Part shown: one piece after another, positions 1,281 through 45,769 of the stretch
Layout of the letters: every line of letters begins with the position of its first letter
Numbering within the stretch: position 1 is the stretch's first letter
IMG/VR virus record: IMGVR_UViG_3300037725_000018
Location: 124,001-188,000 of that record
DNA: 64,000 bases
Direction: 5' to 3' (one strand)
Program-made: the position numbers and the translations under genes
The notes under the pieces: generated by a model
Seen by the model: the letters and a program-made list of their open reading frames with translations, nothing else
Database searches by the model: none
What the model was told of the DNA's origin: nothing

Positions 1281-1329
1281 AGAATATAGACATTAATATT
1301 TGAATTGAAAACAGATAAAAATTTTATAG

Positions 1330-1743
1330 TGGACCCGGCGGGATTCGAACCCGCGTCCGCAGCACCTTTGCAACATCGGTTGTCACAGTCTTAGAATGGT
1401 CTTTATTTTTGACCGACAGACTATTGTATTAGACCACACAAAAGTTTGTGGGTTTTATTTCAACCCGCTATCGGACTTGTTTTACGTTCTGCCTACCAAG
1501 CAAAACAAGTTGAAGCCCAGTAGGAATATCCGATGGTGTGTGCCTTACTCTCTATCGGAGTCGAGAAGTAAGGCTGCAGTTACGCCGCAAGAGAAGCGCC
1601 GAAGTGCTCCTCCATGTTGACGCCTGCAGGAACGCGGTTAACGTTGCCAAGTATTGATTCCGTCAGTTATTTTATGCCCACCTAACGGTAAGGGCAGACT
1701 GCCGACCTTGCTCCGCGTGCTACGTCGAAGCCGTGTCAGGCCC
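1330..1743 (-). ncRNA. ssrA: tmRNA; tag ORF 1648-1580 encodes GNVNRVPAGVNMEEHFGASLAA*
   Basis: 5' GGGCCTGACACGGCTTCGAC, 3' GCGGGTTCGAATCCCGCCGGGTCCA; G3:U acceptor wobble; tag ends LAA-stop; CCA not encoded. Confidence 0.95.
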
Positions 1744-1850: not shown

Positions 1851-1884
1851 CCGCGAAATAAATCTTCATAGAACCTTTAAAGAG

Positions 1885-1956
1885 TGGAGGATAGGGGAAT
1901 CGAACCCCTAACTCTGCCGTGCAAAAGCAGCGTGTTTCCGTTAGCACCAATCCCCC
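1885..1956 (-). tRNA. tRNA-Ala(TGC)
   Basis: Acceptor GGGGGAT/ATCCTCC with G3:U70; anticodon loop TT-TGC-AC; T-loop GGTTCGATTCC. Confidence 0.95.
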
Positions 1957-8280: not shown

Positions 8281-8595
8281 TTACGATTCATCTTCTAAAA
8301 GTTCCTCCATATACGCAACAAGTTTATTTTTTCGAACAACGCCAACATGCTCTTTTACGAGTTCTCCTTTGTAGTAGACGTGAATAGTTGGAACGCTTCG
8401 AATGCCTTTCTCAGAAACGTGATCTATGTTTTCATCGATGTTAACCTTTACTATTTCGGTTCCGTCAACGTCAACTTTGTCTAATACCTTTGCAAGACGG
8501 TTACACGGCCCGCACCATTCGGCATAGTAATCTATAACCGCAACATCTGTGTTGTTGATAACATCTTCAATTTCTTCTGCCTGTATTTCTTTCAT
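8281..8595 (-). CDS. trxA: Thioredoxin
   Basis: DYYAEWCGPC, VNIDEN, GIRSVPT. Confidence 0.95.
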   Translation of the reverse strand: MKEIQAEEIEDVINNTDVAVIDYYAEWCGPCNRLAKVLDKVDVDGTEIVKVNIDENIDHVSEKGIRSVPTIHVYYKGELVKEHVGVVRKNKLVAYMEELLEDES

Positions 8596-8654
8596 GTAAT
8601 TTAAAGTAGTTTTTATCAGTTCGTTTATTAGTGTTTCGGGTGTTGTGTGTTTTT

Positions 8655-8796
8655 GGCAGCGTCCGGGAATCGAACCCGGAGAGAAAACAGGAGTGAAAAT
8701 TTACAATCCAGTTCTTATGCTGGTTTGTAAGGCCGCAAATTACCTGCCTTCTCAACGCCGAAGATCCGACTTTCGACGTGCCCATCGCAACGCTGC
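8655..8796 (-). ncRNA. tRNA-like RNA (142 nt) with acceptor stem and T-arm but no canonical anticodon arm
   Basis: GCAGCGT/ACGCTGC acceptor; CCGGG-TTCGATT-CCCGG T-arm; long internal stem GAGAAGGCAGG/CCTGTTTTCTC. Confidence 0.75.
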
Positions 8797-8870
8797 TTCA
8801 CTCATATATAAGAGACTTCAAGAAAGCTTCACACTTGAAAACGAAAGCGGTTTGGTTTGTCGTATATCTA

Positions 8871-9306
8871 TTCACACACAAGCAACATTTCGGACACAAT
8901 CTAAAGCGTATGTCGCCTATGCGTTGACCGAACTAATCCGGTTTTTTGACCGGGCACTGATAAACATTTGCCTAGTTCATCGCAGGCTAAAAAAAGTATC
9001 AGCGGGGCCACATACGAAGAGGCGAACGATGCCGAGCACGGCAACCGGGACTGTTTGACAAACAGTTTAAAGAAATCAAACAGGGTTGGTGGGAACGTTC
9101 GCCTCTTACGATCCGACGTAAGATCGTAAATTTTACGTCATACCATATGTCCGAAATAAAACAAGCCCAACTGGAAGCATAAGATCCGGGATCGATTCCG
9201 GTGAGAAGTTCCAGCGGCTAAAACGGCTTGACCGGAGAGTGTTCTAAAATCTCTTCCCGGTTAAGCATGGGGTTTGTATGTCCAAACCCGAATACTGGAG
9301 TGTGAA
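8871..9306 (+). ncRNA. Large structured non-coding RNA of unknown family (~435 nt)
   Basis: At least 10 complementary stem pairs including long-range ones and a pseudoknot; G-U pairs favour + strand; no credible CDS. Confidence 0.65.
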
Positions 9307-9319
9307 GGGAAGCAAAAAA

Positions 9320-9560
9320 AACTTTGAAGTGTTATTTGTAATGCTAGTAGTAATATTAATAGTAGTAGTAGTAGTGAAAGGTGTCTTTGAAGTTTTACTT
9401 TTAAACTAAACTAAAACTGAAAAAACTACACTTGATACTACTGAAAATAACACTTTGAAACCTTTTACAGCTTCACTTTTAAGTTACACTTCCTTTCTTA
9501 CTTTCTACCTATAAATAGAAGTAGAGGGTAAAACACTTTAAAATAGGTTTACGCACTTAA
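9320..9560. repeat. AT-rich low-complexity tract with (AGT)n and dispersed ACACTT repeats
   Basis: AGTAGTAGTAGTAGT; ACACTT near 9428, 9450, 9486, 9534; inverted AAGTGT near 9328. Confidence 0.6.
9509..9518 (+). promoter_or_regulatory. Class B promoter, T4-late-like CTATAAATAG
   Basis: Exact TATAAATA about 65 bp upstream of 9582. Confidence 0.6.
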
Positions 9561-9581
9561 AGCCTAAAACTTAACAAAACT

Positions 9582-9938
9582 ATGAAACTACAAGAAAGAA
9601 AACTTCGCTCGCTTATTAGAGAAATAACAAAAGACGTGTTGTTTGAAGACGAAAAAGACCTAAGTGACGTAGATGTAGAAGAAGGAAAAATGCACCGGGT
9701 TTTAGACATTCCAGAAGACGAAAATATATCTGACAACTACGATTCCGGTGAACAGCTTGCAAGAGACTTAGTAGACGCTGTAGGAGATGAACAAGAAGCT
9801 TCTGGAATGCTTGCATTTGCAGCAAATATTGATCCGGAAGACAACATTTTTGACGACGCTTTAGAAGCAATTGGAGAAATTGACTTTGAAGAGTCTTTGA
9901 AGTTAAAAAACAAGACTAGCTACAAAGACCTCTTTTAG
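9582..9938 (+). CDS. Acidic protein with candidate capsid-targeting propeptide
   Basis: MKLQERKLRSLIREITKDVLFE. Confidence 0.75.
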   Translation: MKLQERKLRSLIREITKDVLFEDEKDLSDVDVEEGKMHRVLDIPEDENISDNYDSGEQLARDLVDAVGDEQEASGMLAFAANIDPEDNIFDDALEAIGEIDFEESLKLKNKTSYKDLF

Positions 9939-10004: not shown

Positions 10005-10301
10005 ATGAAATTTTCAGAACTAGTACAAGAGTTGGTAGTAAAAGAGCAAGAGAAAGGAGAACTAAAGGCCCTAGCAGGTCTTGACCCAAACGAAACGATG
10101 AACGTTGCCGCAGCAAGAGACGTTGGCCGGGAAGTAGCCCAAATGACCGATGAAGAGCGCCGCACTCGCTTTCTAAACATGATTAAAGCTCTTGGCGGGT
10201 ACTACACAGGAAGAAACAGAGAAACGCAGCTAAAGCTTACAGACCTTCGAACCGCCGCTCTTGAAGCGTACAACGAAGAAAGAGGCGAAATTGAAAATTA
10301 A
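10005..10301 (+). CDS. Hypothetical protein with candidate propeptide
   Basis: MKFSELVQELVVKE. Confidence 0.7.
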   Translation: MKFSELVQELVVKEQEKGELKALAGLDPNETMNVAAARDVGREVAQMTDEERRTRFLNMIKALGGYYTGRNRETQLKLTDLRTAALEAYNEERGEIEN

Positions 10302-10528
10302 CTATAGAAGTCAAGTTTAAACATTTCAGAAGCGCCCGTTTTCACATCAAATTTTCCATCATCTTCACCCTTAACATACTTTTTAAAGAGCGGCAATTCA
10401 TTATCTTCGGCAAATTGTCCATTGTAAATATCAACCAAAACTAAAGAATCACCCACGCGCAAGTTTTCGTAGGTGGAGCTAGAACAGAATTTTCGATAGT
10501 CTTTATGATTCTGAAAAACAATATTCAT
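10298..10528 (-). CDS. Micro-protein family (MNIVFQN)
   Basis: Family N-motif. Confidence 0.6.
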   Translation of the reverse strand: MNIVFQNHKDYRKFCSSSTYENLRVGDSLVLVDIYNGQFAEDNELPLFKKYVKGEDDGKFDVKTGASEMFKLDFYS

Positions 10529-30181: not shown

Positions 30182-31000
30182 TTAGACTTCCGTGTTCCAA
30201 CCTTTCTCCTTTAAGAAAGATTGAAGATCATCTATTTGCTCGTCACTTAGATTAGACTCTCCGATTTCTATGGTCACAAACAAATCTCCATTCTCCTTGT
30301 TCCAGCTTTGCACTCCGTGTCCGGAAATCTTAAACGTTTCTCCATTTTTGGTTCCCCTTGGAACCTTCACGTTTATCTTTTTACCGTGTGGGTTTTCAAC
30401 TGTTACCTCCCCACCTATTACTGAGCGAAGTGGAGAGACCTTGACAGTTTTCCAAATGTCGGTTCCGTCTCTTCGGTCAAATTCTTTTGGTTCATTGACG
30501 TGAGCCCGTACAAAAATGTTATAGGCAGGATCTACATTTTTTTCATATCCGCTTTCGGCCCCGGACGGAATTTCGACGGTATACGAGTTTTTACCGTATT
30601 TATACCCGTTTGAAACTTCATACTTTTGGGTTTCTAAAATATCTTCAAAATCCAAGTACAGGTAAAGAACCTTCTTTTTTCTCTTCTTTCTTCGTCTGGA
30701 CCTCTGCTTAAAATCTTGAACGAAGTCTGTAAAAAACTCTTCCGGGTCAACGTGATGTTTGGGGCCAGCCGAATAACCTTGAAACCAATCCCCCGAACTT
30801 TTCTCTCTATCGTATTCTTCCCGCTTTTCGGGATCACTTAAAACTTGGTACGCTTCATTGATTTTTTGAAACGTTTGAACGTCCCCGCCTTTTGTGTCCG
30901 GATGATGTTTTTTTGAAAGTTTTCGAAAAGCGGTTTTGATTTCTTCTTGGGTTGCGTCTTTGTCAACCCCAAGAATGTCGTAGTAACTTTTTTCGCTCAT
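30182..31000 (-). CDS. dnaJ: DnaJ/CbpA-type co-chaperone (no zinc finger)
   Basis: YYDILGV, HHPD, INEAYQVLSD, GDLFV. Confidence 0.92.
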   Translation of the reverse strand: MSEKSYYDILGVDKDATQEEIKTAFRKLSKKHHPDTKGGDVQTFQKINEAYQVLSDPEKREEYDREKSSGDWFQGYSAGPKHHVDPEEFFTDFVQDFKQRSRRRKKRKKKVLYLYLDFEDILETQKYEVSNGYKYGKNSYTVEIPSGAESGYEKNVDPAYNIFVRAHVNEPKEFDRRDGTDIWKTVKVSPLRSVIGGEVTVENPHGKKINVKVPRGTKNGETFKISGHGVQSWNKENGDLFVTIEIGESNLSDEQIDDLQSFLKEKGWNTEV

Positions 31001-31027
31001 CTGTGATATACTTGTTGTGTAAATTTT

Positions 31028-31267
31028 TTACTCGGAACTTCCCCCTCCTGTGTTATACCGATAAGTGATTCGCCCCTTTTCCAAATCATAAGGGCTAAGT
31101 TCAACCTTCACGCGGTCCCCCGGAAGAATGTTGATTTTGTTATTTCGAATGTCCCCGCTACAGTAGCAGTGCGCTTGCTTTCCGTTGTCAAACTCAACGG
31201 TAAAATTGTAATTTGGGTGCTCGTTAACAACGGTTCCATCCTTTTCAATTGGTTCTTGTTTTGCCAT
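31028..31267 (-). CDS. infA: Translation initiation factor IF-1
   Basis: MAKQEPIE...[31 protein letters not shown]. Confidence 0.95.
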
Positions 31268-31364
31268 AAAACAGTATATACTTTTTATTAGTTAGTGAAT
31301 GTTTTCGGTTTATTCTTTGGAAATCCTAAACAAACGGTATCGGGTCTTGTTTCTTGAAGTTTAT

Positions 31365-31565
31365 TTAAAGATACCCGCGCCTGTATATGTATCTCGTGAT
31401 TCCGTTTGCAGAGAGATTTGAAAACTGCATTTGTCTTCTAGAAAGGCTGTACGCGGTGAATCTAGGGTTCCGGGTTCCTTGAACGTACGAAGAAACAAGG
31501 CACCCCGAAGAAATCAAAGACATTACCGCTTCAAATTCCCTCTGTTTGTTGGTTAAAATTACCAT
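31365..31565 (-). CDS. Micro-protein family (MVILTNK)
   Basis: Family N-motif. Confidence 0.55.
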   Translation of the reverse strand: MVILTNKQREFEAVMSLISSGCLVSSYVQGTRNPRFTAYSLSRRQMQFSNLSANGITRYIYRRGYL

Positions 31566-31763
31566 TGACCTGCTTGCTTAACATTCATGCGTATATGTAT
31601 ATAGCTTAAAAAGCGAGTCACTTGCAAGCACGTCAAATTCGGAGACTTCCGTGATCCGCGATTTCTTCAATCCACTGAATGTGGTGGGTGATCCATTCTT
31701 CCTCATAGTCAGCTACTTTTCTTGTTCCGTTTCTTGGATCTGACACACAGGAAAGAATAGGTT

Positions 31764-31991
31764 TCACGCCCATCTTTTAATGTAAACACGTTTCATTATG
31801 TCGGTTCGAATGCGACCGTCTCTCATTTCCATTCTCCGAAACGTCATTCCGGACGTTTTATGTGTATCCCCCCGTTCGCTTTCTGAATGTCTGTTTACAA
31901 TCTTTTTTACAAGCCCAATGACTTTATCTAAATTTGTTCGGCTTGGGTCCGGGTGGTTTTTAAAAGAAAGGTAAGCTGTATTGTTTGTCAT
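31764..31991 (-). CDS. Hypothetical protein
   Basis: ATG ORF. Confidence 0.55.
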   Translation of the reverse strand: MTNNTAYLSFKNHPDPSRTNLDKVIGLVKKIVNRHSESERGDTHKTSGMTFRRMEMRDGRIRTDIMKRVYIKRWA

Positions 31992-32178
31992 GCTGGTTTT
32001 TTGGTTTTGAATGTGTATTCTACCTCTGTAAAACCAACTTAGAGCTTTTTTGTTTCATGAAGCTTTTGAAAACAAGTTCATAGGATCTTCATATTTTAGA
32101 TTGAAACCTGTTTCGGGTTTCTGCGTGTAACGTAGTGAAGTTAAGAGAGGGAACCCCTTACCAAACGGCTTAAAAAAG

Positions 32179-37617: not shown

Positions 37618-37625
37618 AAATGCCC

Positions 37626-37799
37626 ATGCCCATAATCGTCGGAAAAAGAAAGGAGCTTAAAGAGGCTTACGTTATCCCAATGACACAAAGACAGTCCCGG
37701 ACCTACAAATGGTTTAAGCATTCTGAAGTAAGAAATATGGGAACTAAGATGGTCAAGGAGTTAATCAGAGAAATATCATCTGAACTTAAAAGAAATTGA
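37626..37799 (+). CDS. Micro-protein (MPIIVGK)
   Basis: Variant N-motif. Confidence 0.55.
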   Translation: MPIIVGKRKELKEAYVIPMTQRQSRTYKWFKHSEVRNMGTKMVKELIREISSELKRN

Positions 37800-37809
37800 A
37801 ACCCAAGTT

Positions 37810-37995
37810 ATGTTCATTGTATTTGAAAGCGAAAAAGAGCGAAAAGAAGCTGTAAACACCGACAAATCATCGGTTCGTTCATTTTGGATTGAGGAAGAAA
37901 TGATTTCAATTAAAAACGTCATGCGGGTTTACAGTTGGGACAACATGCGGCTCGGAAAGTCTCAGGCACGCAAAAAAGTAGCACATAGGCTTTAA
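37810..37995 (+). CDS. Micro-protein (MFIVFES)
   Basis: Family N-motif. Confidence 0.65.
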   Translation: MFIVFESEKERKEAVNTDKSSVRSFWIEEEMISIKNVMRVYSWDNMRLGKSQARKKVAHRL

Positions 37996-38002
37996 TAAGG
38001 AT

Positions 38003-38188
38003 ATGCAAATTATATTCGAGACGTACCTAAAATTTCAAGCTCACTCCACGCCGGAGCTTAGTTTTTCCGGCTTCAAGGTCGGGGAAGCAAGAGACGTGCC
38101 TTCCCGTTGCATCCATGTTAAAAACACAGACACGATCCGGTCTATAAAAAAGCGGCTTCGAAAAGGGCTCGCGCAAGGCAAAAATTGA
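38003..38188 (+). CDS. Micro-protein (MQIIFET)
   Basis: Family N-motif. Confidence 0.65.
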   Translation: MQIIFETYLKFQAHSTPELSFSGFKVGEARDVPSRCIHVKNTDTIRSIKKRLRKGLAQGKN

Positions 38189-38276
38189 CTTCCATATCGA
38201 GACCGGGTAGAGAAACGATTTCAAAAGACCTACCCCCCTTCAAATAACAAGTTCAATTGACCCCCCCCCCTTAAGG

Positions 38277-38438
38277 ATGGTTTTGATTGCACATTCGCAT
38301 AAAGAACTTCAAATTGCAGTTAGAATGTCACACGACCTTCTTCTTGTTCACGATTCGGTTTTCTTTCCCCGCTCTTCATACTGGATTCGAAACAAAGAAA
38401 ATATGCATCGGTTCATAAAAAGTGATTTGAAAGTGTAA
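38277..38438 (+). CDS. Micro-protein (MVLIAHS), 53 aa
   Basis: Manual translation. Confidence 0.55.
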   Translation: MVLIAHSHKELQIAVRMSHDLLLVHDSVFFPRSSYWIRNKENMHRFIKSDLKV

Positions 38439-38455
38439 AGATTAGTAGTAACATC

Positions 38456-38665
38456 ATGGTTGTTGTATATACAAAGAAAACATTAAGGAAGATAGAATCA
38501 AAGGTCGTGGAAAAGTTTTTAGAAGAAGATGAGGACGCTTTTATTATGCCAGTGGAGCTTCCGGTGTTGAACTACAAGACGCAGCGGAGCATTGTCCAAA
38601 ACGCGATTCAGTCTACGTCGTGGGAAGAATACACAAACCCTGAAATGCGACCTCAAAACATATGA
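38456..38665 (+). CDS. Micro-protein (MVVVYTK)
   Basis: Family N-motif. Confidence 0.6.
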   Translation: MVVVYTKKTLRKIESKVVEKFLEEDEDAFIMPVELPVLNYKTQRSIVQNAIQSTSWEEYTNPEMRPQNI

Positions 38666-38844
38666 TCATTATCCTTCCAGAAAACGAAAAAGAACACGGG
38701 GCAGCTCTTTGGCGTCGGTGGGACAAAAATCCCAAGATACTTGTCCTTCCATACCGAATGTCAAGTTTTCAAGGAGAAGGTGGGGCAGCCGTTTTCGGGA
38801 GGGTAAGGTTTCACGTAAAAGACAAACTAAGTAAAAAAGCATGA
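38662..38844 (+). CDS. Micro-protein (MIIILPE)
   Basis: Family N-motif; ATGA overlap. Confidence 0.65.
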   Translation: MIIILPENEKEHGAALWRRWDKNPKILVLPYRMSSFQGEGGAAVFGRVRFHVKDKLSKKA

Positions 38845-39035
38845 TGGTTTTGATCTTTCAAGATGAAGAGTAAAGAAGTAAGGTTCTTGAGCAGCCCGGA
38901 GCAACCTTTTTTTCAAAAGTCAAATGCCACGACAAGAACATTAGAATTAAAGAAACGTGTGAATTTCTTCAAGGCAGGCTAAGAAACTCTAAAAAGCTGT
39001 CTAAACTTTTGAGGCTAAAAATTAAAACGGCTTAA
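38841..39035 (+). pseudogene. Micro-protein with premature TAA (MMVLIFQDEE*RSKVLEQ...KIKTA*)
   Basis: In-frame TAA at 38871-38873; frame stays open to 39035. Confidence 0.65.
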
Positions 39036-39043
39036 TAGAAGAA

Positions 39044-39238
39044 ATGCAAATCATCTTCAACGACATAGACGAAATCAAATCGTGCATCGAAGAGTCAATA
39101 TATGCCAACTCGAAAACGCGCACCCTTAGAGGAACAAATGTTTCCATAAACGTTTGGGACATGTGGCACACCGATTATGTGCGAGCTAATGGAGCAGAGG
39201 TTATAAAAAAAGTTAGATCCAAATTGAAAGAAGAATGA
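39044..39238 (+). CDS. Micro-protein (MQIIFND)
   Basis: Family N-motif. Confidence 0.65.
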   Translation: MQIIFNDIDEIKSCIEESIYANSKTRTLRGTNVSINVWDMWHTDYVRANGAEVIKKVRSKLKEE

Positions 39239-39450
39239 TTATATACTTCGAACGTGGCGAAAAACAAAAAAGCCACCTGCGCGGCCTTTTTGGAAGGCAA
39301 AAGAAAACAGACCTTTCCTTCCACTTCGGAAAGATTGAAGACACAGACTGCTATTGGTATAACATTTCCGGAAACACAAAACGAAAAAGACCGGGTGAAG
39401 GTCTTAGAAGCAGAGAGCACTTAAAATTCATAACCGAAATTGCAATTTGA
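39235..39450 (+). CDS. Micro-protein (MIIYFER)
   Basis: Family N-motif; ATGA overlap. Confidence 0.65.
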   Translation: MIIYFERGEKQKSHLRGLFGRQKKTDLSFHFGKIEDTDCYWYNISGNTKRKRPGEGLRSREHLKFITEIAI

Positions 39451-39457
39451 AAACCCC

Positions 39458-39643
39458 ATGCATATACTTTTTGAGGACACACGCGAATTTAAAAAATACG
39501 ACGGGACGTTTTATTACTTCAACGGTGGGCCGGAAATTTACGCGCATGAAGCAAGTGTTTTGACATACAGACGCAAAAAACTTACATTAGACAAACAAAA
39601 AAGAAAGCGCGTAAAAAAGAGGCTCAAAAAAAACATCGCATAA
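39458..39643 (+). CDS. Micro-protein (MHILFED)
   Basis: Family N-motif. Confidence 0.65.
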   Translation: MHILFEDTREFKKYDGTFYYFNGGPEIYAHEASVLTYRRKKLTLDKQKRKRVKKRLKKNIA

Positions 39644-39662
39644 CGGCGGCAGCAGGCAAAAA

Positions 39663-39848
39663 ATGGTTATTATAGTATCGGAAGAAAACACAAAACAAAA
39701 AACGTGGACGTTTTACGATAAAAATTTTTTTTCAGATCACAAGACGTGGTTTATCCCCACGGAGTCTTATGAAATAGAGCAAGGAGAAAGGTTCCCAAGC
39801 GTCCGGAGAAAAGCGAATACATCCCATATCATCAAGTCTCTTTCTTAA
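39663..39848 (+). CDS. Micro-protein (MVIIVSE)
   Basis: Family N-motif. Confidence 0.65.
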   Translation: MVIIVSEENTKQKTWTFYDKNFFSDHKTWFIPTESYEIEQGERFPSVRRKANTSHIIKSLS

Positions 39849-39852
39849 ACCA

Positions 39853-40020
39853 GTGATTATAGCAATTCCAGAATCCAAATTTGAGTGGCAAGTTTTCTAT
39901 CAAGACTTACCTTTTAAAGATTTAAAAGTTGTCCCGGAACCCCGAATTTACGATAACTACATAGAAATGTCAAGAAAAAGAACGGTTCTTTCGATAATAA
40001 AGGAACAAACAACTTCTTGA
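39853..40020 (+). CDS. Micro-protein (GTG start, MIIAIPE), 55 aa
   Basis: Manual translation. Confidence 0.55.
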   Translation: MIIAIPESKFEWQVFYQDLPFKDLKVVPEPRIYDNYIEMSRKRTVLSIIKEQTTS

Positions 40021-40022
40021 AA

Positions 40023-40082
40023 ATGATCATCACGATTCCAGCGGAGAATAATAAAGAAAGAGAAAAATGGGAATGCTTGTAA
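40023..40082 (+). pseudogene. Truncated micro-protein remnant MIITIPAENNKEREKWECL*
   Basis: Family N-motif, only 19 aa. Confidence 0.45.
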
Positions 40083-40249
40083 TCTTTGAAAATTTTGAAG
40101 AAATGGACAAAGTTTCAAAACCGAAGGGAAAGTACGAGCTTGTCGGGGAAGCAAAAGTCCCCGCGTTCAACGTCCACGTCAAAAGAAACTTCAAACGCCC
40201 AAGCGTGTTTAGAAGAGAAATGAAAATAGCTGTGTTCTCTAAGTTGTAA
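40073..40249 (+). CDS. Micro-protein (MLVIFEN)
   Basis: Family N-motif. Confidence 0.65.
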   Translation: MLVIFENFEEMDKVSKPKGKYELVGEAKVPAFNVHVKRNFKRPSVFRREMKIAVFSKL

Positions 40250-40428
40250 GAGCAAAAGCAATAAGACAGCCATCCCGACCACTTTTCCTTGGACATGATA
40301 CAGACAAAGAGTATTACAACATCCGGTCACACAAACCCGAAAGCGGTTTATTAGTAGGTGGTTTGCATATAAACGGGGAAAAGCTTTCTAGCCATTGGAT
40401 ATATGTCAGGTGAGTGAATGGAAGAAAG

Positions 40429-40461
40429 CCCCACACAAGGCAAATAAAACCTCACGTGAGG
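40429..40461. repeat. CCCCACACAAGGC imperfect hairpin, copy 1
   Basis: Related copies at 41217 and 46867. Confidence 0.7.
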
Positions 40462-40788
40462 TAAAATATGGTTTTTATATTGAGACCGGGGCGAAAACCA
40501 TTTCATTTTTACCGGGGGTACCGATTATAGCAAGTTATTTTTACCCCCACCCCCCTGTAGAATGTACACAGCCTTGTAGTAGATGGTAGAATGTACATGT
40601 GAATTCAAAAAGCCGTTTCAAAACGAAATGCAAAAGCTTCAATTCAAGACAAAGCACATGTAGTTTTTACCGTTTGCAGTTTTGGCATGGAATTTGCCTT
40701 CTGCGTCAAAACAAGACGTGTAGCTTTTACAAGGGAGGTGGGCGTTGGCATACAGTTTGCTTTAAAAAACCATAAACAGATAATTGGC

Positions 40789-40950
40789 ATGATTGTTGTT
40801 ATCGAAAGAAGAGAAGACATAAACGGCTCCAGCCTTAAATTTTTTGATTCTGAAATAAGGCTAAAAGTAGGCAGGGCAGTTGTTCGTAGGTGGTGCCCGT
40901 CTGGGTGGCCTTTACGATACAAAAGAGAGTACATCCGAAAGCATATTTGA
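40789..40950 (+). CDS. Micro-protein (MIVVIER)
   Basis: Family N-motif. Confidence 0.6.
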   Translation: MIVVIERREDINGSSLKFFDSEIRLKVGRAVVRRWCPSGWPLRYKREYIRKHI

Positions 40951-40969
40951 AAACCAGTTGAAAAAAGAT

Positions 40970-41143
40970 ATGATCGTTATCCTTGTTGAAGAGAAGGCCA
41001 ATTCTTTTAGCGTCGAAGACTTTGAAAAAGAAGTTGCAGTTATCCCAAGTGCAAAGGCGTACGTCTCTCTTTCGGTTCTTTCAAATGTTCAAGGGCTAAA
41101 GATGCGGAGGCGACATGTGGATAATGCCATTCGAAAGCTTTAA
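40970..41143 (+). CDS. Micro-protein (MIVILVE)
   Basis: Family N-motif. Confidence 0.6.
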   Translation: MIVILVEEKANSFSVEDFEKEVAVIPSAKAYVSLSVLSNVQGLKMRRRHVDNAIRKL

Positions 41144-41216
41144 TAGAAGCCTCTGTCTTTTCTTCTAAGAAGTTTTTCATGTGTGCCCTTGCGGTGGGAT
41201 AGGCAAATAAAAAAAA

Positions 41217-41250
41217 CCCCACACAAGGCAAATTGGCGCCTCGCGTGGGG
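41217..41250. repeat. CCCCACACAAGGC imperfect hairpin, copy 2 (convergent junction, possible terminator)
   Basis: CCCCACACAAGGC-AAATTGGC-GCCTCGCGTGGGG. Confidence 0.75.
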
Positions 41251-41277
41251 AATTGGGTGCCCGAATGTGGCCGACGT

Positions 41278-41523
41278 TTACAGATTCATCGCCATAGCCG
41301 AAGCCAAGTGCTTCAAGAAGTGATGGATATCTCCGTTTTTGAAATCAATCTTTCGAATGATCCTTTCAATCCGTTTCCTCTCTTGTCCCCGCGTCTGTTT
41401 GATCTGTTCAATCACATTTGAAGCTTGGATGTAGTTGACGGTTCCGTTTTCAGACTCGACGGTGTAAGTGCGGGTAGTGTCAACGTCTGCTTCCTTGAAG
41501 TACGTCGTGATGAAGTCGTTCAT
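41278..41523 (-). CDS. Hypothetical protein (MNDFITTYF)
   Basis: Class A promoter at 41600. Confidence 0.75.
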   Translation of the reverse strand: MNDFITTYFKEADVDTTRTYTVESENGTVNYIQASNVIEQIKQTRGQERKRIERIIRKIDFKNGDIHHFLKHLASAMAMNL

Positions 41524-41627
41524 CGGCTTTTTGTTTTGTGAAAGAGTCTCCATTGTCACGTCTAACAACACAATTAAAAAACGAGCGCCCCCCAAGGATG
41601 TTCCCAAGGGAGGCGCTCGTCTTGGTT

Positions 41628-41897
41628 TTACCAATCCCAACTGTCCCAATTGTTTTCGGTTTCAAAAACCACTTCTCCGTCTTCGACTCGCTGAATAATG
41701 TTTTTGTTATACAACGTGTACGTTCTCATTCGCCCGTCAGAATACTTCATGACAAGCGAGTGGTCGGAAGGAAGAGTCTTCGTCTCCCGGCCTTCATTTT
41801 TGGAAAAACGAAAGTAATGCTTTGCTTCTTCTTTCCGGTAAAACACATTCAAGTGTTCATCGGAGAGAACAAAAAACGGGGCTTCGTAATCAAACAT
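41628..41897 (-). CDS. Hypothetical protein (MFDYEAPF)
   Basis: Class A promoter at 41966. Confidence 0.7.
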   Translation of the reverse strand: MFDYEAPFFVLSDEHLNVFYRKEEAKHYFRFSKNEGRETKTLPSDHSLVMKYSDGRMRTYTLYNKNIIQRVEDGEVVFETENNWDSWDW

Positions 41898-42013
41898 GTT
41901 TCTGTTTGCTTTTATGAAGTTTCCTCTCTTTAAGCCAGTGCAATAAACAAGCGCCCCCCAAGGGTGTTCCCAAGGAAGACGCTCGTTTTGGTTTTTCAAT
42001 TGCAACTTCCTTT

Positions 42014-42184
42014 TTACGAAGGAAGTGGAACTTCCGTCACGTTGGGTTCGCCATAGTTTTCTTCTAGCTCTTCAATCGAATCGTACCCGGCGTCGTCTAC
42101 GTAATACGCCAAAGCATCTTCTTTGCTTTCGGCGGCGTAGAGGCCCAACATGGTTCCGTTTGCGGAAATCTCAAATGCTTTCAT
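42014..42184 (-). CDS. Small acidic protein (MKAFEISANG)
   Basis: Class A promoter at 42248. Confidence 0.7.
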   Translation of the reverse strand: MKAFEISANGTMLGLYAAESKEDALAYYVDDAGYDSIEELEENYGEPNVTEVPLPS

Positions 42185-42237
42185 GAGCTTCGGTGGTTTT
42201 TGTTTTCTTTCCCTGTGCAACCTTGTAAACCCACAGC

Positions 42238-42510
42238 CTACGAGTATGTTTCACGAACGCACGTGAACGTTTCTTCCGGCCACGGGGGACCGGAGATTTC
42301 CCGAAGCTGCCTTCCGTCTTCATCAATCTCAAAGACTTCCACATCTTCGAGCTTCGCCTCTTCCCACGGGAACAGGTTTAGCTCCATGTGGGCTTGATTT
42401 CGAGCGTTGTCTACCGCCTTTTGTGGACTTGCACTTGACCGGGCATAGACAAACCCGTATCGGCCCGAGTCCTTGCCAGTTGCAACTGCCGATGCTTCGT
42501 AGGTAGCCAT
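42238..42510 (-). CDS. Hypothetical protein
   Basis: ATG ORF. Confidence 0.7.
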   Translation of the reverse strand: MATYEASAVATGKDSGRYGFVYARSSASPQKAVDNARNQAHMELNLFPWEEAKLEDVEVFEIDEDGRQLREISGPPWPEETFTCVRETYS

Positions 42511-42646
42511 TTGTTTCTTTTGTCTTTGTGAACAGGTTCTCTTTTCTAAGCCACTACAACAACAACAACAACAACAAACAAAAGGGAAGGGGAACTGCTC
42601 CCCTTCCCGTGTGAAGATTTGTTTAACTAGTGAAACTTAGCTTCAG

Positions 42647-42841
42647 TTAAGAAGAAGACTTAGGGTAGATGATTTCCGAACCAACAGTTCGGGCGTCTTC
42701 GTCTTCGTAGCGGTAGAGAACTTCCGCGTCTTCCCCAAGACGCTTTGCGTGGTTTATAGCCTCTACCTCCGAAAGATAAAACGCGGTGTCCGGGCCGTAG
42801 TTTCCATCGGGGGAAACAAGGTATTCTTCTGAAATCGTCAT
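42647..42841 (-). CDS. Small acidic protein (MTISEEY)
   Basis: ATG ORF. Confidence 0.65.
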   Translation of the reverse strand: MTISEEYLVSPDGNYGPDTAFYLSEVEAINHAKRLGEDAEVLYRYEDEDARTVGSEIIYPKSSS

Positions 42842-42894
42842 ATCGGTTTTTGTTGTTAACTGTCTGTCTTGAAGCTTTGAGTTTCCTGTTAACC

Positions 42895-43176
42895 TCACAC
42901 ACTTGCCCAATCGGGATCTTCCCCTTCACGGGTAATGTCTTCGGCAGAAAAGCTTCGGACCCGGTGAGGAAAGAAATACACCTTCATATTTTCCCCATCG
43001 ATAGAAGCGACGTATCCACCACTTCCTTCGGTGGCCTTGTCAAGTTGACGCCGCACCTCGTAGGATTGGGGAGTGTCGTCAAACTCGACGGTAATGGTTC
43101 CTTCTTCCTCAAGCTGGTGCCAGAACTCTTCAGTTGCCGGGTGCGGGTCTTCAACGTGAACGTGAATGTTATCCAT
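42895..43176 (-). CDS. Small acidic protein
   Basis: Class A promoter at 43251. Confidence 0.75.
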   Translation of the reverse strand: MDNIHVHVEDPHPATEEFWHQLEEEGTITVEFDDTPQSYEVRRQLDKATEGSGGYVASIDGENMKVYFFPHRVRSFSAEDITREGEDPDWASV

Positions 43177-43995
43177 AGGGTTAAGTGTTTGGGATGTTGC
43201 GGATTGTCTGCCGAAAAATGCGTGTGCTTAAAAAGGTGTTGGAAGATGAAGTTCCGTGAAGCTTGTGTGAAGTGTGAATACTCTGTGAAGAGGGAACACT
43301 TTGTTGGTTTGAAGGTTTAAGTTAGTGCAGGGGGAGGAATATCTTTTTTTGCGTAAGTAGATTCTGTGAAGTGGAATGAATATTGCTTCGGTAGCAAATT
43401 CCATTCCAACCCTTCCGGCAGGTGTTCATTCAATATTGATTTATGTTTCCTGTAGAGACTCAAGTAAACTTATTTTAGCCCCCAACCCTCTTAGACGCCG
43501 TTGAACGGGCTTTGGGCTTTTATTTGAATATTGAATATTGAATATTGAACGCCAAGTGCCAACCAACCTGCCTTCAGCGGCTACAGACGTAGATTCTATG
43601 TTTCTCGCTCGGGGTTTGGTAAACTTATTTATTGTTGGAACGGGTTTTGCTACCGTAGACATACAATAACACATCAAATACTATGCCACACCCCAAGGCA
43701 CATAGATCGCCTCTAAGCGGTTTAAGTGTTTGTAGGTATGTGGGGCAAGGCCATGTGGCGAAATCCACGCACACACGCGCACGTGCGCCCGTGAGGCTTG
43801 TCTTGATGTTAGCGGTGCAACGCTGTCCCCGCGTCTTTTGACACACGCTCCCTTGTGAGCTTAGGGACCTAAGTATGAGAAAAGATGCGGGGACGCTTTT
43901 CACGTGTCCCCGTTGACAGACGCCGAAGTTTTTTGATACACATTTGCCGGGTGGGAACAAACTTATAGTTTCCCCCGTTTTAGCGCCAAAAAAAG

Positions 43996-44169
43996 ATGAT
44001 CGTCGTTATAGACAAAAAAGAAAGAGAAGACTTCGCTGCAACCAAGTTTCACAAGTTCGTAAACGTCCCTCCGGGTATGAGAAAAGACGTGGGGTGTCTT
44101 CATAACTTAGAAGACGGGTCCGGGCACCTTCTTCGGTTTGCAAAAGTTTTAGTCAAGTCTTACTTGTGA
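43996..44169 (+). CDS. Micro-protein (MIVVIDK), 57 aa
   Basis: Manual translation. Confidence 0.6.
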   Translation: MIVVIDKKEREDFAATKFHKFVNVPPGMRKDVGCLHNLEDGSGHLLRFAKVLVKSYL

Positions 44170-44243
44170 AAGAAAAAGCTGACGTGCGTGGTCCCCGTAT
44201 ACAATTTTTATTAGCCAATGCCAATGTCAATTTTTATCCGTTT

Positions 44244-44456
44244 ATGGTTGTTCTTATTGAAACAAAAACAGAAGACGAAGAGTTTTACAATTACGTGTCC
44301 GGGATGCGGGTTTTGGTTTTGGGGACTTTTGAAACGGTCCCTTTATATCGAATACCGGATTTTGAAATTTTTAAGGTAGCCAAAACTGAAGGCTTCTGTG
44401 TAAAGGAGAATGGTCGGCTCACAATTCTTCATCACGGAATAGCAAAAGTGAGGTAA
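44244..44456 (+). CDS. Micro-protein (MVVLIET)
   Basis: Paralog of next ORF. Confidence 0.7.
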   Translation: MVVLIETKTEDEEFYNYVSGMRVLVLGTFETVPLYRIPDFEIFKVAKTEGFCVKENGRLTILHHGIAKVR

Positions 44457-44461
44457 AAAAG

Positions 44462-44665
44462 ATGGTTCTTGTTTTCGAAGACGAAACAGAAAAAGAAAGG
44501 TTTGACAAACAGGTGTCCGAAACGGGCGTGGGAGTGTTTGGCCTTTTTGAAACCCTTTCTTTGTATAAAGAAAAAGCATTTAAGGTTCTTCGGTTTGCCA
44601 AAAGAGAAGGGCTAATTACAAGAGAAGACGGGCGTCTCATTTTAGTTTACTATGGAGTAGAGTAA
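44462..44665 (+). CDS. Micro-protein (MVLVFED)
   Basis: Paralog of previous ORF. Confidence 0.7.
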   Translation: MVLVFEDETEKERFDKQVSETGVGVFGLFETLSLYKEKAFKVLRFAKREGLITREDGRLILVYYGVE

Positions 44666-44681
44666 AACGTAGGGAAAAAAG

Positions 44682-44906
44682 ATGGTTATTCTTGTTGAAA
44701 ACAAAAGAGAAAAAACCCCTTTGAAAAAAGCGTGTGGGGGAAGAGTTGAAGACGAATTTGAACTTTTAAAAGAGCGGATTCTGTTGCACGCGGGGCACTC
44801 GTCTCCGATGGATTTTCTAGTGTACATCAAAAAAAGGCTCCACTCTTGCCCAAGCACCGGAAGACTTACCTGCGACATAACGCCAATACGTAACAACAAA
44901 AAATAA
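44682..44906 (+). CDS. Micro-protein (MVILVEN)
   Basis: Family N-motif. Confidence 0.65.
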   Translation: MVILVENKREKTPLKKACGGRVEDEFELLKERILLHAGHSSPMDFLVYIKKRLHSCPSTGRLTCDITPIRNNKK

Positions 44907-44915
44907 CAGACAGTT

Positions 44916-45113
44916 GTGGTTGTTATCATTGAAGACTCGAAACTTGTTTCAGAAATTCAAGACTACTTCTCCGTCTGTTTAGAGGAAAATCTTGATGTGT
45001 ATGAGCAGGTTTGGCTTTGCCGTGTGGATAGCAGCAAGCCGGAATATTTGCGTTTTATGAAAAAACGCGGATTTGACAGGATAGAAGAGAACAAAAGAAT
45101 GATTTTTAAGTAA
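44916..45113 (+). CDS. Micro-protein (MVVIIED)
   Basis: Family N-motif. Confidence 0.65.
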   Translation: MVVIIEDSKLVSEIQDYFSVCLEENLDVYEQVWLCRVDSSKPEYLRFMKKRGFDRIEENKRMIFK

Positions 45114-45165
45114 GCATACGCAAGGGAAAAATTAGCTCCTTCATCAAAACTGCGTAAAGTGTGCA

Positions 45166-45351
45166 ATGATTGTTTTCGTTGTTGAAAGCACAGAAGGCAA
45201 GTCCGCGTTTTTTGATTTGACAAACAAAAACCGGAAAAACTTTGGAAGCGGCGTAAGCGTGGTTTTCTCTCATAAGTACGTCGGCTCCGGAACGGCCCGA
45301 GAATGCGCTTTGAAAGTCAAACAAAAGATCAAAAAATCCAAGCAAAAGTAA
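45166..45351 (+). CDS. Micro-protein (MIVFVVE)
   Basis: Family N-motif. Confidence 0.6.
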   Translation: MIVFVVESTEGKSAFFDLTNKNRKNFGSGVSVVFSHKYVGSGTARECALKVKQKIKKSKQK

Positions 45352-45357
45352 TGAGCC

Positions 45358-45543
45358 GTGGTTATCCTAATAGAAAGCAAAAAAGAGGAAAAAGAGCTTA
45401 ATAACTTAGTGAGGAGTTCTGGTTTTGAACTTGACTTTCTTGAAAGACTTCCTGCCTTTTGGCACGTGCCGGAACTTTTGCTGCGTGACCTGAAAACGGT
45501 AGGTTTTAAAACAGAACAAAGGCGATTAAAATTTAATCGGTAG
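45358..45543 (+). CDS. Micro-protein (MVILIES)
   Basis: Family N-motif. Confidence 0.65.
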   Translation: MVILIESKKEEKELNNLVRSSGFELDFLERLPAFWHVPELLLRDLKTVGFKTEQRRLKFNR

Positions 45544-45558
45544 TAACCGAATCAGCTA

Positions 45559-45753
45559 ATGATTGTCATTTTGAAAAACATACAGGAGGGCAGGCATTTA
45601 GAAAATGTTAAGGGGGTGGGTCCCAAAAGAGAAGAGGTCGTATACGAATATAGATATGGGCCACGCCTGCGGGTTCAAATCCTAAGAGATTGCAGAAAAG
45701 GGGCAAAAGAAGGTGGGGAGCGGCTGAAAATTCCGGGCCGAATACGTCAGTAA
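45559..45753 (+). CDS. Micro-protein (MIVILKN)
   Basis: Paralog of next ORF. Confidence 0.7.
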   Translation: MIVILKNIQEGRHLENVKGVGPKREEVVYEYRYGPRLRVQILRDCRKGAKEGGERLKIPGRIRQ

Positions 45754-45769
45754 AAACAGATATGTAAAT

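What the first reader, a model, noticed from the sequence alone, without database searches (positions are those of the whole stretch)
8871..9306. Unclassified ~435-nt multi-stem RNA with a pseudoknot
Seen pairings: TTCACAC 8871/GTGTGAA 9300 (closing); ATTTCGGACA 8887/TGTCCGAAAT 9148; CGTATGT 8907/ACATACG 9010; CTGATA 8957/TATCAG 8997; AAGAGGCGAACG 9017/CGTTCGCCTCTT 9096 enclosing CTGTTTGA/TCAAACAG; hairpin TTACGATC 9106/GATCGTAA 9122 whose loop GACGTAA pairs with TTACGTC 9133 (H-type pseudoknot); CTGGAA 9171/TTCCAG 9209; GCTTGACCGG 9226/CCGGTTAAGC 9257; GGGTTTG/CAAACCC. G-U pairs favour the + strand and there is no credible CDS. Established: phages carry large structured RNAs of unknown function near tRNAs (GOLLD, ROOL). 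I cannot assign this one to them, to RNase P or to an intron. Inference: a new large ncRNA or ribozyme, or a replication primer RNA given the adjacent AT-rich tract.
Basis: partly seen in the sequence, partly recalled or inferred. Interest (0 to 1): 0.82.

Follow-up and report, generated by a model that had tools for sequence, protein, structure and literature searches.

The report
Unclassified 440-nt structured phage RNA
A jumbo-phage genome from tidal-flat metagenomes carries a ~440-base non-coding stretch that folds into an unusually stable many-helix RNA, is conserved far better than the neighbouring protein genes and matches no known RNA family, so it is probably a new phage RNA gene of unknown function.

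Summary
The fold is far more stable than shuffles (z -6.7), and perfect stems and the H-type pseudoknot are far commoner than chance. No reading frame is open.

The window comes from a 223-kb IMG/VR phage contig. The only relatives that carry the element are close ones from tidal-flat and brine metagenomes. In the one diverged lineage (L084), the element is 94.5% identical. Flanking genes are 75-85% identical and the spacers 59-71%. It is therefore the best-conserved segment in about 10 kb.

Changes in helices are C-to-U opposite G or one compensatory C-G to U-A pair. The rest sit in loops or at helix ends.

The + strand is favoured, though not proven. The evidence is A-rich loops, G.U-type changes, better-retained stability in L084, and a conserved TATA-like box at the 5' edge.

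Rfam (4227 families) gives nothing, so it is not ROOL, GOLLD, RNase P, an intron, a T-box or tmRNA. No distant homologue was found, so covariation cannot be tested statistically. No RNA-seq run was listed.

Best reading: a new, lineage-restricted, trans-acting structured RNA, next to a diverging non-canonical tRNA-like gene. The replication-primer idea has no support.

The parts
8863..9340 (+). Block conserved between the two diverged lineages (window and L084); sequence on both sides diverges sharply
   Evidence: Alignments A1 and A2. Identity is 0.945 over 8871-9306, against 0.71 for 8798-8862 and 0.62 for 9321-9581. The contig of run X10 also stops matching at 9333.
8863..8870 (+). Conserved TATA-like box (TATATCTA) at the 5' edge of the conserved block; candidate -10 element for rightward transcription (inferred)
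   Evidence: Identical in L084 although the 20 nt before it are unalignable. Similar TATA boxes lie upstream of the tRNA-like gene, of ORF 9582 and in two other intergenic regions.
8871..9306 (+). The structured RNA proper (ends inferred from closing helix P1; true ends unknown)
   Evidence: MFE -157.7, z -6.7. No Rfam match. No ORF.
8871..8877 (+). P1 5' strand, pairs with 9300-9306; closes the molecule
   Evidence: In L084, X8 and X10, 8875 C>U keeps the pair as G.U on the + strand only.
8887..8896 (+). P2 5' strand, pairs with 9148-9157 (10 perfect bp across 250 nt); encloses the 5' and central domains and the pseudoknot
   Evidence: 9156 A>U in L084 breaks the second-outermost pair. RNAalifold instead pairs 8886-8888 with 9267-9269.
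8907..9016 (+). 5' domain: P3 (8907-8913/9010-9016), 8915-8918/9005-9008, hairpin 8937-8954, helix 8957-8962/8997-9002, hairpin 8970-8987
   Evidence: 8907 C>U (L084) and 9008 C>U (X10, X14) both fall opposite G. This is the most variable domain.
9017..9107 (+). Central domain: 12-bp P4 (9017-9028/9096-9107) enclosing hairpin 9030-9043, helix 9044-9048/9086-9090 and helix 9051-9058/9076-9083. CAAACAG occurs twice (9059 and 9077), giving an alternative partner for 9051-9057
   Evidence: Invariant in all haplotypes except the 17-nt terminal loop (9067, 9073, 9075).
9108..9139 (+). Candidate H-type pseudoknot: S1 9108-9113/9122-9127, one-nt L1 (9114), S2 9115-9121/9133-9139, A-rich L3 9128-9132. 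The nested alternative is a 10-bp hairpin 9115-9124/9130-9139
   Evidence: Read from the sequence. The arrangement occurs in 2/2000 shuffles. It lies inside a 67-nt stretch (9076-9142) invariant in every haplotype seen, so there is no covariation for or against.
9164..9219 (+). 3' domain arm 1: 9164-9167/9216-9219, 9171-9176/9209-9214, hairpin 9186-9191/9196-9201 whose loop region holds the palindrome AUCGAU
   Evidence: The only fully compensatory change is 9186 C>U with 9201 G>A, turning C-G into U-A.
9226..9266 (+). 3' domain arm 2: 14-bp interrupted hairpin (one G.U, which would be an A.C mismatch on the minus strand)
   Evidence: All three changes (9240, 9244, 9246) fall in the 11-nt terminal loop.
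9270..9289 (+). 3' domain arm 3: local hairpin, or alternatively 9271-9276 pairs with 8878-8883 to extend P1
   Evidence: Local hairpin in the single-sequence fold. L084 has three changes in the 3' half (9282, 9286, 9290) while the 5' half and 8878-8883 are invariant, and RNAalifold prefers the long-range pairing. Unresolved.
8655..8796 (-). Neighbouring, divergently oriented non-canonical tRNA-like gene. It has a 7-bp acceptor stem, no D stem, an 8-bp arm with a 9-nt loop, a long arm of about 70 nt and a canonical T arm (GGTTCGATTCC). It is not part of the large RNA but is the only other conserved non-coding block in the spacer
   Evidence: Fold z -4.1. Several compensatory changes in the long-arm base, the T stem and the 8-bp arm across three haplotypes, with G.U pairs only on the minus strand. 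Not called by default ARAGORN or Rfam tRNA. The best Rfam match is tRNA-Sec at 16.8 bits, E 3.3.
9307..9581 (.). AT-rich (28% GC), poorly conserved tract between the RNA and ORF 9582-9938; holds a conserved promoter-like block at about 9487-9520

Best explanation
This is a real non-coding RNA gene of about 440 nt, of a family not yet described, carried by one narrow lineage of jumbo phages.

It is most likely transcribed rightward (+ strand). The start would lie just after a conserved TATA-like box at 8863-8870, in the 73-bp spacer it shares with a leftward tRNA-like gene.

The transcript folds into a closed architecture. P1 and P2 bring the two ends together. Inside P2 lie a variable 5' domain, an invariant central domain closed by a 12-bp helix, and a compact H-type pseudoknot. 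Three hairpin arms lie between P2 and P1.

Helices and single-stranded, A-rich joints are conserved almost equally. I therefore infer a densely packed tertiary fold that acts in trans as a stable scaffold or partner-binding RNA, not as a message or a leader. It would resemble ROOL and GOLLD in kind: large phage RNAs near tRNA genes. Its likeliest sphere is the phage's translation and tRNA module: tRNA-like RNA, tmRNA, tRNAs and peptide deformylase within 8 kb.

Shown: the structure signal, the non-coding nature, the purifying selection and the absence from all Rfam families. Inferred: the strand, the ends, the pseudoknot, action in trans, and any link to tRNA biology.
For: Structure far beyond chance:
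- z -6.7. Stem and pseudoknot enrichment.
- Other non-coding gaps of the window give z between -1.8 and +1.7.

Non-coding:
- Stops in all frames and a 1-nt indel in the relative.

Selection:
- 94.5% identity to L084, against 75-85% for nine flanking genes and 59-71% for spacers.
- The same holds in the read and contig data of four runs.

Pairing retained:
- Of 125 curated pairs, 98.8% of cells pair.
- One compensatory C-G>U-A (9186/9201).
- Three C>U changes opposite G (8875, 8907, 9008).
- All three changes of arm 2 fall in its terminal loop.

Strand:
- Unpaired bases are 45% A on +, the same as the window's tmRNA in sense, against 40% U on the minus strand.
- The L084 sequence folds to -152.7 on + against -146.7 on the minus strand.
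- A conserved TATA-like box sits exactly at the left edge of the conserved block, and none sits at the right edge.

Independent unit:
- ORF 9582 has its own conserved promoter-like block.
- Its homologue in a 263-kb relative (L002) has no such RNA upstream.

No known family.
Against: - No transcript evidence: no RNA run was listed.
- Only two diverged haplogroups exist in every collection searched, so covariation cannot be tested. The shuffle control is uninformative at 261/500.
- Against the unbiased single-sequence MFE, 13 of 25 variant positions fall in predicted pairs, so there is no depletion. Several of these break weak or terminal pairs (8962, 8967, 8969, 8983, 9156).
- In the window itself both strands fold equally well.
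- No recognisable sigma-70 promoter or intrinsic terminator bounds the element.
- The proposed function rests on context and analogy alone.
Confidence: 0.55

Rival explanations
1. The RNA is made from the minus strand. It would be the 5' part of the leftward transcription unit that continues into the tRNA-like gene and thioredoxin. RNase P cleavage at the 5' end of the tRNA-like element would then release it.
For: - All genes to the left, including the adjacent tRNA-like gene, are on the minus strand.
- A single divergent promoter region in the AT-rich tract would be the simplest layout.
- The minus strand folds as well as the plus strand in the window (-156.9, z -6.9).
- Two U>C changes (8967, 8969) would be G.U-compatible only on the minus strand.
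Against: - Three C>U changes opposite G become A.C mismatches on the minus strand. The one in the middle of P1 costs 6.2 kcal/mol on the minus strand against 1.9 on plus.
- L084 folds 6 kcal/mol worse on the minus strand.
- Loops would be U-rich.
- The tRNA-like gene has its own conserved upstream box, and the 50 nt between the two elements are poorly conserved.
- No TATA-like box lies at the right edge.
Confidence: 0.15
2. It is a cis-acting 5' leader (a riboswitch-, attenuator- or T-box-like sensor) that controls the two small downstream + strand ORFs (9582-9938 and 10005-10301).
For: - It has the same orientation as the favoured strand and lies upstream of these ORFs in both lineages.
- Hairpin 9106-9129 followed by AUUUU scores as terminator-like and competes with the alternative hairpin 9115-9139.
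- The duplicated CAAACAG gives alternative pairings.
Against: - 275-340 nt of unalignable AT-rich DNA separate it from the ORF.
- The ORF has its own conserved promoter-like block.
- The ORF's homologue in L002 has no such leader.
- Conservation continues 170 nt beyond the putative terminator.
- No riboswitch or T-box model matches.
Confidence: 0.08
3. It is a ribozyme: either self-cleaving or self-processing, or an RNase-P-like processor for the odd tRNA-like RNA next door.
For: - Size, closed multi-domain architecture, a pseudoknot in the most conserved 67 nt, and conservation of unpaired nucleotides are typical of large ribozymes.
- It sits next to a tRNA-like gene that standard tools do not recognise.
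Against: - No match, even at E up to 10, to RNase P (bacterial A or B, archaeal), group I or II introns, or any small ribozyme model.
- There is no exon context and no interrupted gene.
- The universal RNase P CR-I/CR-V motifs were not seen on reading the sequence.
Confidence: 0.07
4. It works at the DNA level: an origin of replication with a primer transcript, a packaging site or another protein-binding array. The inverted repeats would then be DNA features.
For: - An adjacent AT-rich tract with short repeats.
- Four GATC sites within 90 nt (9110-9193).
- 7-nt terminal inverted repeats.
Against: - The helices are nested over 430 nt. Nine G.U pairs are mismatches in DNA.
- Variation preserves G.U and compensatory pairs.
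- The AT-rich tract is the least conserved part.
- The GC-skew minimum and the gene-strand switch are at about 32 kb, not here.
- Gene orientation does not diverge around the element beyond a 1.4-kb island.
Confidence: 0.05

Closest known systems
ROOL RNA (Rfam RF03087)
   Same: Large (hundreds of nt), multi-stem, pseudoknotted, with no ORF. It is encoded by phages and prophages, often near tRNA islands, and its function is unknown (PMC12286853). The element here is also phage-borne, next to a tRNA-like gene and within 8 kb of a tmRNA and two tRNAs. It has A-rich joints and a palindromic loop sequence (AUCGAU) that could in principle form a kissing contact.
   Different: No sequence or structure match to the ROOL model even at E up to 10. 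It is shorter (about 440 nt). It is known from one phage lineage only. There is no evidence of oligomerisation.
GOLLD RNA (Rfam RF01998)
   Same: Phage- and prophage-encoded, large, ornate and tRNA-associated; expression rises during lysis; function unknown (PMC12286853).
   Different: GOLLD members often exceed 800 nt and share a conserved 3' region. There is no match here and no tRNA embedded within the element.
tmRNA and bacterial RNase P RNA (closed, multi-domain, pseudoknotted RNAs of the tRNA and translation sphere)
   Same: The 5' and 3' ends are paired, there are nested domains and H-type pseudoknots, about 45% of unpaired bases are A, and the genomic company is tRNA genes.
   Different: The window has its own canonical tmRNA elsewhere (1327-1743, 91 bits). 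This element has no tRNA-like acceptor/T-arm end of its own, no tag ORF and no RNase P conserved regions, and matches neither model.
T-box leader RNAs
   Same: Both are long structured RNAs that read a tRNA by base pairing. Here an 8-nt stretch of the pseudoknot region (9110-9117) is complementary to the 9-nt loop of the neighbouring tRNA-like RNA.
   Different: There is no T-box model match. No aminoacyl-tRNA synthetase or amino-acid gene lies downstream. The complementarity is expected by chance about 3% of the time for that loop, was noticed after the fact, and is not testable by covariation because both sites are invariant.

Membership tests
ROOL (RF03087) | Match to the family covariance model (sequence plus consensus structure) at or near the gathering score | tested here: not met
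   No hit at the gathering threshold. No hit at E up to 10 with permissive filters on 1151 nt and on 466 nt.
ROOL / GOLLD | Phage or prophage location near tRNA genes | tested here: met
   The 223-kb IMG/VR phage contig. A tRNA-like gene lies 75 nt away. A tmRNA, tRNA-Ala and tRNA-Cys lie within 4.5-7.5 kb. This is context only and does not define membership.
ROOL / GOLLD | Assembly into RNA-only homo-oligomeric cages | not testable with these tools
   Needs native gels or cryo-EM of the transcript.
GOLLD (RF01998) | Match to the covariance model, including the universally conserved 3' region | tested here: not met
   No hit.
RNase P RNA (bacterial A/B, archaeal) | Covariance-model match; P4 helix formed by the conserved CR-I and CR-V regions | tested here: not met
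   No hit at E up to 10. No CR-I-like motif was seen on reading 8871-9306.
Group I intron (RF00028) | Model match; insertion in a gene, with exons that join to a functional product | tested here: not met
   No hit. The flanks are non-coding, poorly conserved spacers, and no interrupted ORF or tRNA spans the element.
Group II intron | Domain V/VI model match; 5' GUGYG and 3' AY boundaries | tested here: not met
   No hit. GUGUG occurs only at the 3' end of the element (9300), as the P1 strand.
tmRNA (RF00023) | tRNA-like acceptor/T-arm domain formed by the two ends, plus a tag reading frame | tested here: not met
   The tmRNA model and ARAGORN find the window's tmRNA at 1327-1743 only. Nothing is found in 8871-9306.
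Guide RNAs of IscB/IsrB/TnpB (HEARO / omega RNA) and retron msr-msd | An adjacent gene for the partner protein (IscB, IsrB, TnpB or reverse transcriptase), and a model match where one exists | tested here: not met
   Neighbours are thioredoxin and two small ORFs with no Pfam family. No HEARO hit.
Riboswitch / T-box leaders | Model match and direct linkage to the regulated ORF | tested here: not met
   No hit within the element. The weak PreQ1 hit at 9538-9589 (17 bits against a gathering score of 39) is not conserved in L084.

The most novel reading that the evidence does not exclude
The element is the founding member of a new class of large phage RNAs that forms a higher-order particle. It would either self-assemble, as ROOL and GOLLD do (a palindromic AUCGAU loop and A-rich joints are present), or dock the neighbouring D-arm-less tRNA-like RNA. 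The docking would use the 8-nt complementarity between that RNA's 9-nt loop and the invariant pseudoknot region. On this reading the pair is a two-RNA device used in takeover of host translation or in counter-defence.
Probability: 0.12. Interest if true: 0.85.

Novelty: new variant of a known kind. Interest (0 to 1): 0.6.

Why it matters
Large, highly structured non-coding RNAs with no assigned function are rare. The few known phage examples, ROOL and GOLLD, turned out to build RNA-only nanocages.

A further, unrelated example in a jumbo phage would widen that class. This one is compact (about 440 nt), extremely stable in silico, and conserved better than the surrounding proteins. It sits beside a second unusual RNA, a tRNA-like gene without a D stem.

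The sequence alone is enough to start on it, by in-vitro transcription, chemical probing and cryo-EM.

The main limit is that it is known from one narrow lineage, so neither covariation nor expression could be shown here.

Tried and rejected
**Searches for homologues, all negative beyond close relatives**
- blastn in 'distant' mode against GenBank phages and megablast of 20 kb.
- Exact 18-20-mers from invariant parts in IMG/VR: self only.
- The same in JGI metagenome contigs: none, then three chance hits.
- The same in GTDB genomes: two chance hits.
- nhmmer against 83 loci (1 Mb) of phages sharing the zeta-like protein.
- Contigs of the five nearest homologues of the neighbouring hydrolase and thioredoxin. 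Only L084/L085 (80% amino-acid identity) carry the element. Relatives at 45-53% identity (L086, L089, L090, L092) lack it at the syntenic place.
- Covariance models of the central domain (R1) and of the tRNA-like gene (R2) against 1.1 Mb: self only.

**Other checks**
- RNA-seq: no run listed.
- Paralogues inside the window: none.
- Alternative genetic code or hidden CDS: rejected.
- Promoter motifs (CTTCACACTT, ACACTTTGAA, TTGAAG-N4-AT box): not clearly enriched or not informative.
- The sigma-70 and terminator scan gave nothing convincing at the ends.
- tRNA with an intron: ARAGORN -i proposes tRNA-Thr(UGU) with a 61-nt intron at position 29-30. The covariation supports an 8-bp arm and a long arm instead.
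- Functions of ORF 9582 and ORF 10005: no family found.
- Shared 7-9-mers between the tRNA-like gene and the RNA: 14 runs against about 5-7 expected. I judged this a weak lead only.
- One script timed out and gave nothing.

Full report
**Where the window comes from**

The flanking proteins match IMGVR_UViG_3300037725_000018 at 100% identity. This is a 223-kb viral contig. Public runs that hold the stretch are tidal-flat metagenomes, one brine metagenome and one run with no recorded organism.

The neighbourhood is typical of a jumbo phage that carries translation-related and auxiliary genes:
- a canonical tmRNA (1327-1743, 91 bits);
- tRNA-Ala and tRNA-Cys;
- IMP dehydrogenase/GMP reductase, peptide deformylase, a ClpB-like ATPase and thioredoxin.

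The finding lies in a 986-nt gap between thioredoxin (8281-8595, minus) and a small acidic ORF (9582-9938, plus).

The 436-nt stretch folds to -157.7 kcal/mol. Dinucleotide shuffles give -114.8 +/- 6.4, so z = -6.7. MFE and centroid agree closely.

Counts of perfect Watson-Crick stems:
- 22 of 7 nt or more against 6.1 expected (0 of 1000 shuffles reach this);
- 4 of 10 nt or more against 0.09 (1 of 1000).

The H-type pseudoknot arrangement at 9106-9139 appears in 2 of 2000 shuffles. Three other long non-coding gaps of the same window give z of -1.8, +1.7 and -1.0. The signal is therefore not a property of this genome's intergenic DNA.

All six frames carry four or more stops of mixed type. The phage uses all three stop codons as terminators, and the relative has a 1-nt deletion inside the longest ORF. 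The stretch is non-coding.

**Relatives**

No match was found in GenBank phages. In IMG/VR only the source contig matched. JGI metagenome contigs gave nothing or chance hits, and GTDB genomes gave chance hits only.

Searching the neighbouring hydrolase and thioredoxin against 5.8 billion proteins showed a sparse clade. There are identical or 96-97% copies, one lineage at about 80% amino-acid identity (L084/L085, JGI 3300022700 and 3300022699), and then nothing above about 50%.

L084 is fully syntenic and carries the element. Relatives at 45-53% identity (L086, L089, L090, L092) keep the hydrolase, deformylase, IMPDH and helicase genes. They lack thioredoxin, the tRNA-like gene and the RNA at that place.

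Further searches found nothing but the query itself:
- nhmmer against the fetched loci;
- a covariance model of the central domain against 1.1 Mb of fetched loci.

The element is therefore known from one narrow lineage only.

**Conservation**

| Segment (window vs L084) | Identity |
|---|---|
| RNA 8871-9306 | 94.5% |
| tRNA-like gene | 92.3% |
| Nine flanking protein genes | 74.5-85.5% |
| Spacers | 59-71% |
| AT-rich tract | 62% |

The conserved block runs from 8863 to about 9340 with sharp edges. Contigs of runs X8 and X10 show the same picture: about 3% change inside and about 10% in 8650-8870.

The element is thus the most constrained sequence in about 10 kb. The constraint covers predicted single strands as well as helices.

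**What the variation says about structure**

L084 differs at 23 positions plus one deletion. X10 and X14 add 9008 C>U.

The changes fall as follows:
- One pair changes on both sides (9186/9201, C-G to U-A).
- 8875 and 8907 change C to U opposite G, and 9008 does the same.
- Three cells are broken: 8962, a terminal pair; 9156, next to terminal in P2; and 9286, which a one-step register slip using G9269 could compensate.
- The rest lie in loops and joints. All three changes of the 9226-9266 arm are in its 11-nt terminal loop.

RNAalifold finds a model with no broken pair. It replaces the local 9270-9289 hairpin by 8878-8883/9271-9276 and shortens P2. This fits the cluster of three changes in 9282-9290, but it is fitted to the data.

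Two caveats apply. With two sequences the shuffle control is uninformative, at 261/500. Against the unbiased single-sequence MFE, 13 of 25 variant positions fall in predicted pairs, so there is no depletion. The comparative data are compatible with the fold and mildly supportive. They are not proof.

**Strand**

In the window both strands fold equally well. Four observations favour the + strand:
- The three C>U changes opposite G are wobble pairs on + and A.C mismatches on the minus strand. The one in P1 costs 1.9 against 6.2 kcal/mol.
- The L084 sequence folds to -152.7 on + and -146.7 on the minus strand.
- Unpaired bases are 45% A on +, as in the sense strand of the window's tmRNA. They are 40% U on the minus strand.
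- A TATA-like box (8863-8870) is conserved exactly at the left edge after 20 unalignable bases. Comparable boxes precede the tRNA-like gene, ORF 9582 and two other intergenic gene starts. No such box lies at the right edge.

Against this, two U>C changes (8967, 8969) would suit the minus strand. The simplest operon layout would also have the RNA on the minus strand. I put the + strand at roughly 3:1.

**The neighbour**

Positions 8655-8796 on the minus strand encode a 142-nt RNA with these parts:
- a 7-bp acceptor stem;
- a 10-nt linker in place of a D arm;
- an 8-bp arm with a 9-nt loop;
- a long arm of about 70 nt;
- a canonical T arm.

Across three haplotypes the base of the long arm, the T stem and the 8-bp arm show several compensatory or wobble changes. 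These make sense only on the minus strand. The distal 44 nt of the long arm are invariant.

Default ARAGORN and Rfam tRNA do not call it. ARAGORN's intron mode proposes a tRNA-Thr with a 61-nt intron, which the covariation does not support. It is a genuine, unusual tRNA-like gene.

The large RNA and this gene are the only two conserved islands in the spacer, and they point away from each other. An 8-nt stretch of the pseudoknot region (9110-9117) is complementary to the tRNA-like 9-nt loop. For that loop this is expected by chance about 3% of the time. It was noticed after the fact, so it is a lead only.

**What it is not**

Rfam 15 gives nothing at gathering thresholds, and nothing relevant at E up to 10 on 1151 nt or 466 nt. 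That excludes, as far as these models reach, the following:
- ROOL, GOLLD, OLE, raiA and HEARO;
- RNase P, group I and II introns, and small ribozymes;
- tmRNA, T-box and riboswitches.

No partner-protein gene (IscB, TnpB, reverse transcriptase) is adjacent. No gene is interrupted.

The replication-primer idea finds no support:
- The AT-rich tract is the least conserved part.
- It contains what looks like ORF 9582's own promoter.
- The GC-skew minimum and strand switch lie near 32 kb.

A leader role is unlikely for the same reason. In addition, the ORF's homologue in the 263-kb relative has no such upstream RNA.

**Most likely mechanism**

The best reading is an independently transcribed, stable, trans-acting RNA. 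Its ends are clamped by P1 and P2. Its invariant central domain and pseudoknot (9017-9142) form the functional core.

By kind it sits closest to ROOL and GOLLD. Those are large, ornate RNAs of phages and prophages, often near tRNA islands, with unknown function (PMC12286853). It fails membership of both families.

Whether it binds a protein, the tRNA-like RNA or the ribosome, or assembles with itself, cannot be decided here.

**Verdict**

It is a new family of a known kind, restricted to one phage lineage. Expression, distant homologues and function are all still missing.

Noticed in passing
window 8655-8796 (minus strand): Non-canonical tRNA-like gene (7-bp acceptor, no D stem, 8-bp arm with 9-nt loop, long arm of about 70 nt, canonical T arm). 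Compensatory changes across three haplotypes support it. Default ARAGORN and Rfam tRNA miss it. No homologue in 1.1 Mb of related phage loci.
   Followed up: yes
window 9110-9117 vs 8763-8770: GATCCGAC occurs in both places on the + DNA strand. A + strand large RNA would therefore be complementary over 8 nt to the 9-nt loop of the minus-strand tRNA-like RNA. Both sites are invariant. Chance is about 3% for that loop, and this was noticed post hoc. A 9-nt inverted match (9176-9184 vs 8713-8721) involves the other loop but is broken in L084.
   Followed up: partly
window 1327-1743 and 1884-1956 (minus strand): Phage-encoded one-piece tmRNA (91 bits; tag peptide GNVNRVPAGVNMEEHFGASLAA) next to tRNA-Ala(UGC). 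A relative (L090 2279-2726) also carries a tmRNA.
   Followed up: partly
window 9307-9581: AT-rich (28% GC) tract with TAG/TAGTAG runs and three + strand copies of a CTTTGAA-like word. It is almost unalignable with L084 except for a block at about 9487-9520 that ends in TATAAATAG, probably the promoter of ORF 9582. A weak PreQ1-like hit at 9538-9589 is not conserved.
   Followed up: partly
window 10298-10528 (minus strand): This 76-aa ORF has no counterpart in the otherwise syntenic L084 (alignment identity 0.12). It is a replaced or inserted cassette right after the + strand island.
   Followed up: no
window about 31000-32050: A gap of about 1 kb with no ORF of 80 aa or more coincides with the cumulative GC-skew minimum and a switch of gene strand. 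This is a better candidate for a replication origin or module boundary than the finding's AT tract. It is not unusually structured (z -1.8).
   Followed up: partly
window 37618-48472: Several further gaps of 300-970 nt with no ORF of 80 aa or more (37618-38591, 39421-40029, 45224-45896, 46167-46928, 47936-48472). The two that were folded are not unusually structured (z +1.7 and -1.0).
   Followed up: partly
L086 about 1500-1610 (263-kb relative, tRNA cluster): A stretch with paired ends (GGGCGAT...ATCGCCCA) and two T-arm-like hairpins (GGTTCGAATCC and GAGTTCGAATCTC). The Rfam tRNA model does not call it. It is possibly another odd tRNA-like gene in this phage group.
   Followed up: no
window 8827-8834, 8870-8877; L084 spacer: The P1 5' strand word TTCACAC is repeated 43 nt upstream in the window. 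It occurs in three copies, two of them imperfect, in L084's spacer. The upstream copy could pair with 9300-9307 if transcription started further left. Its meaning is unknown.
   Followed up: no
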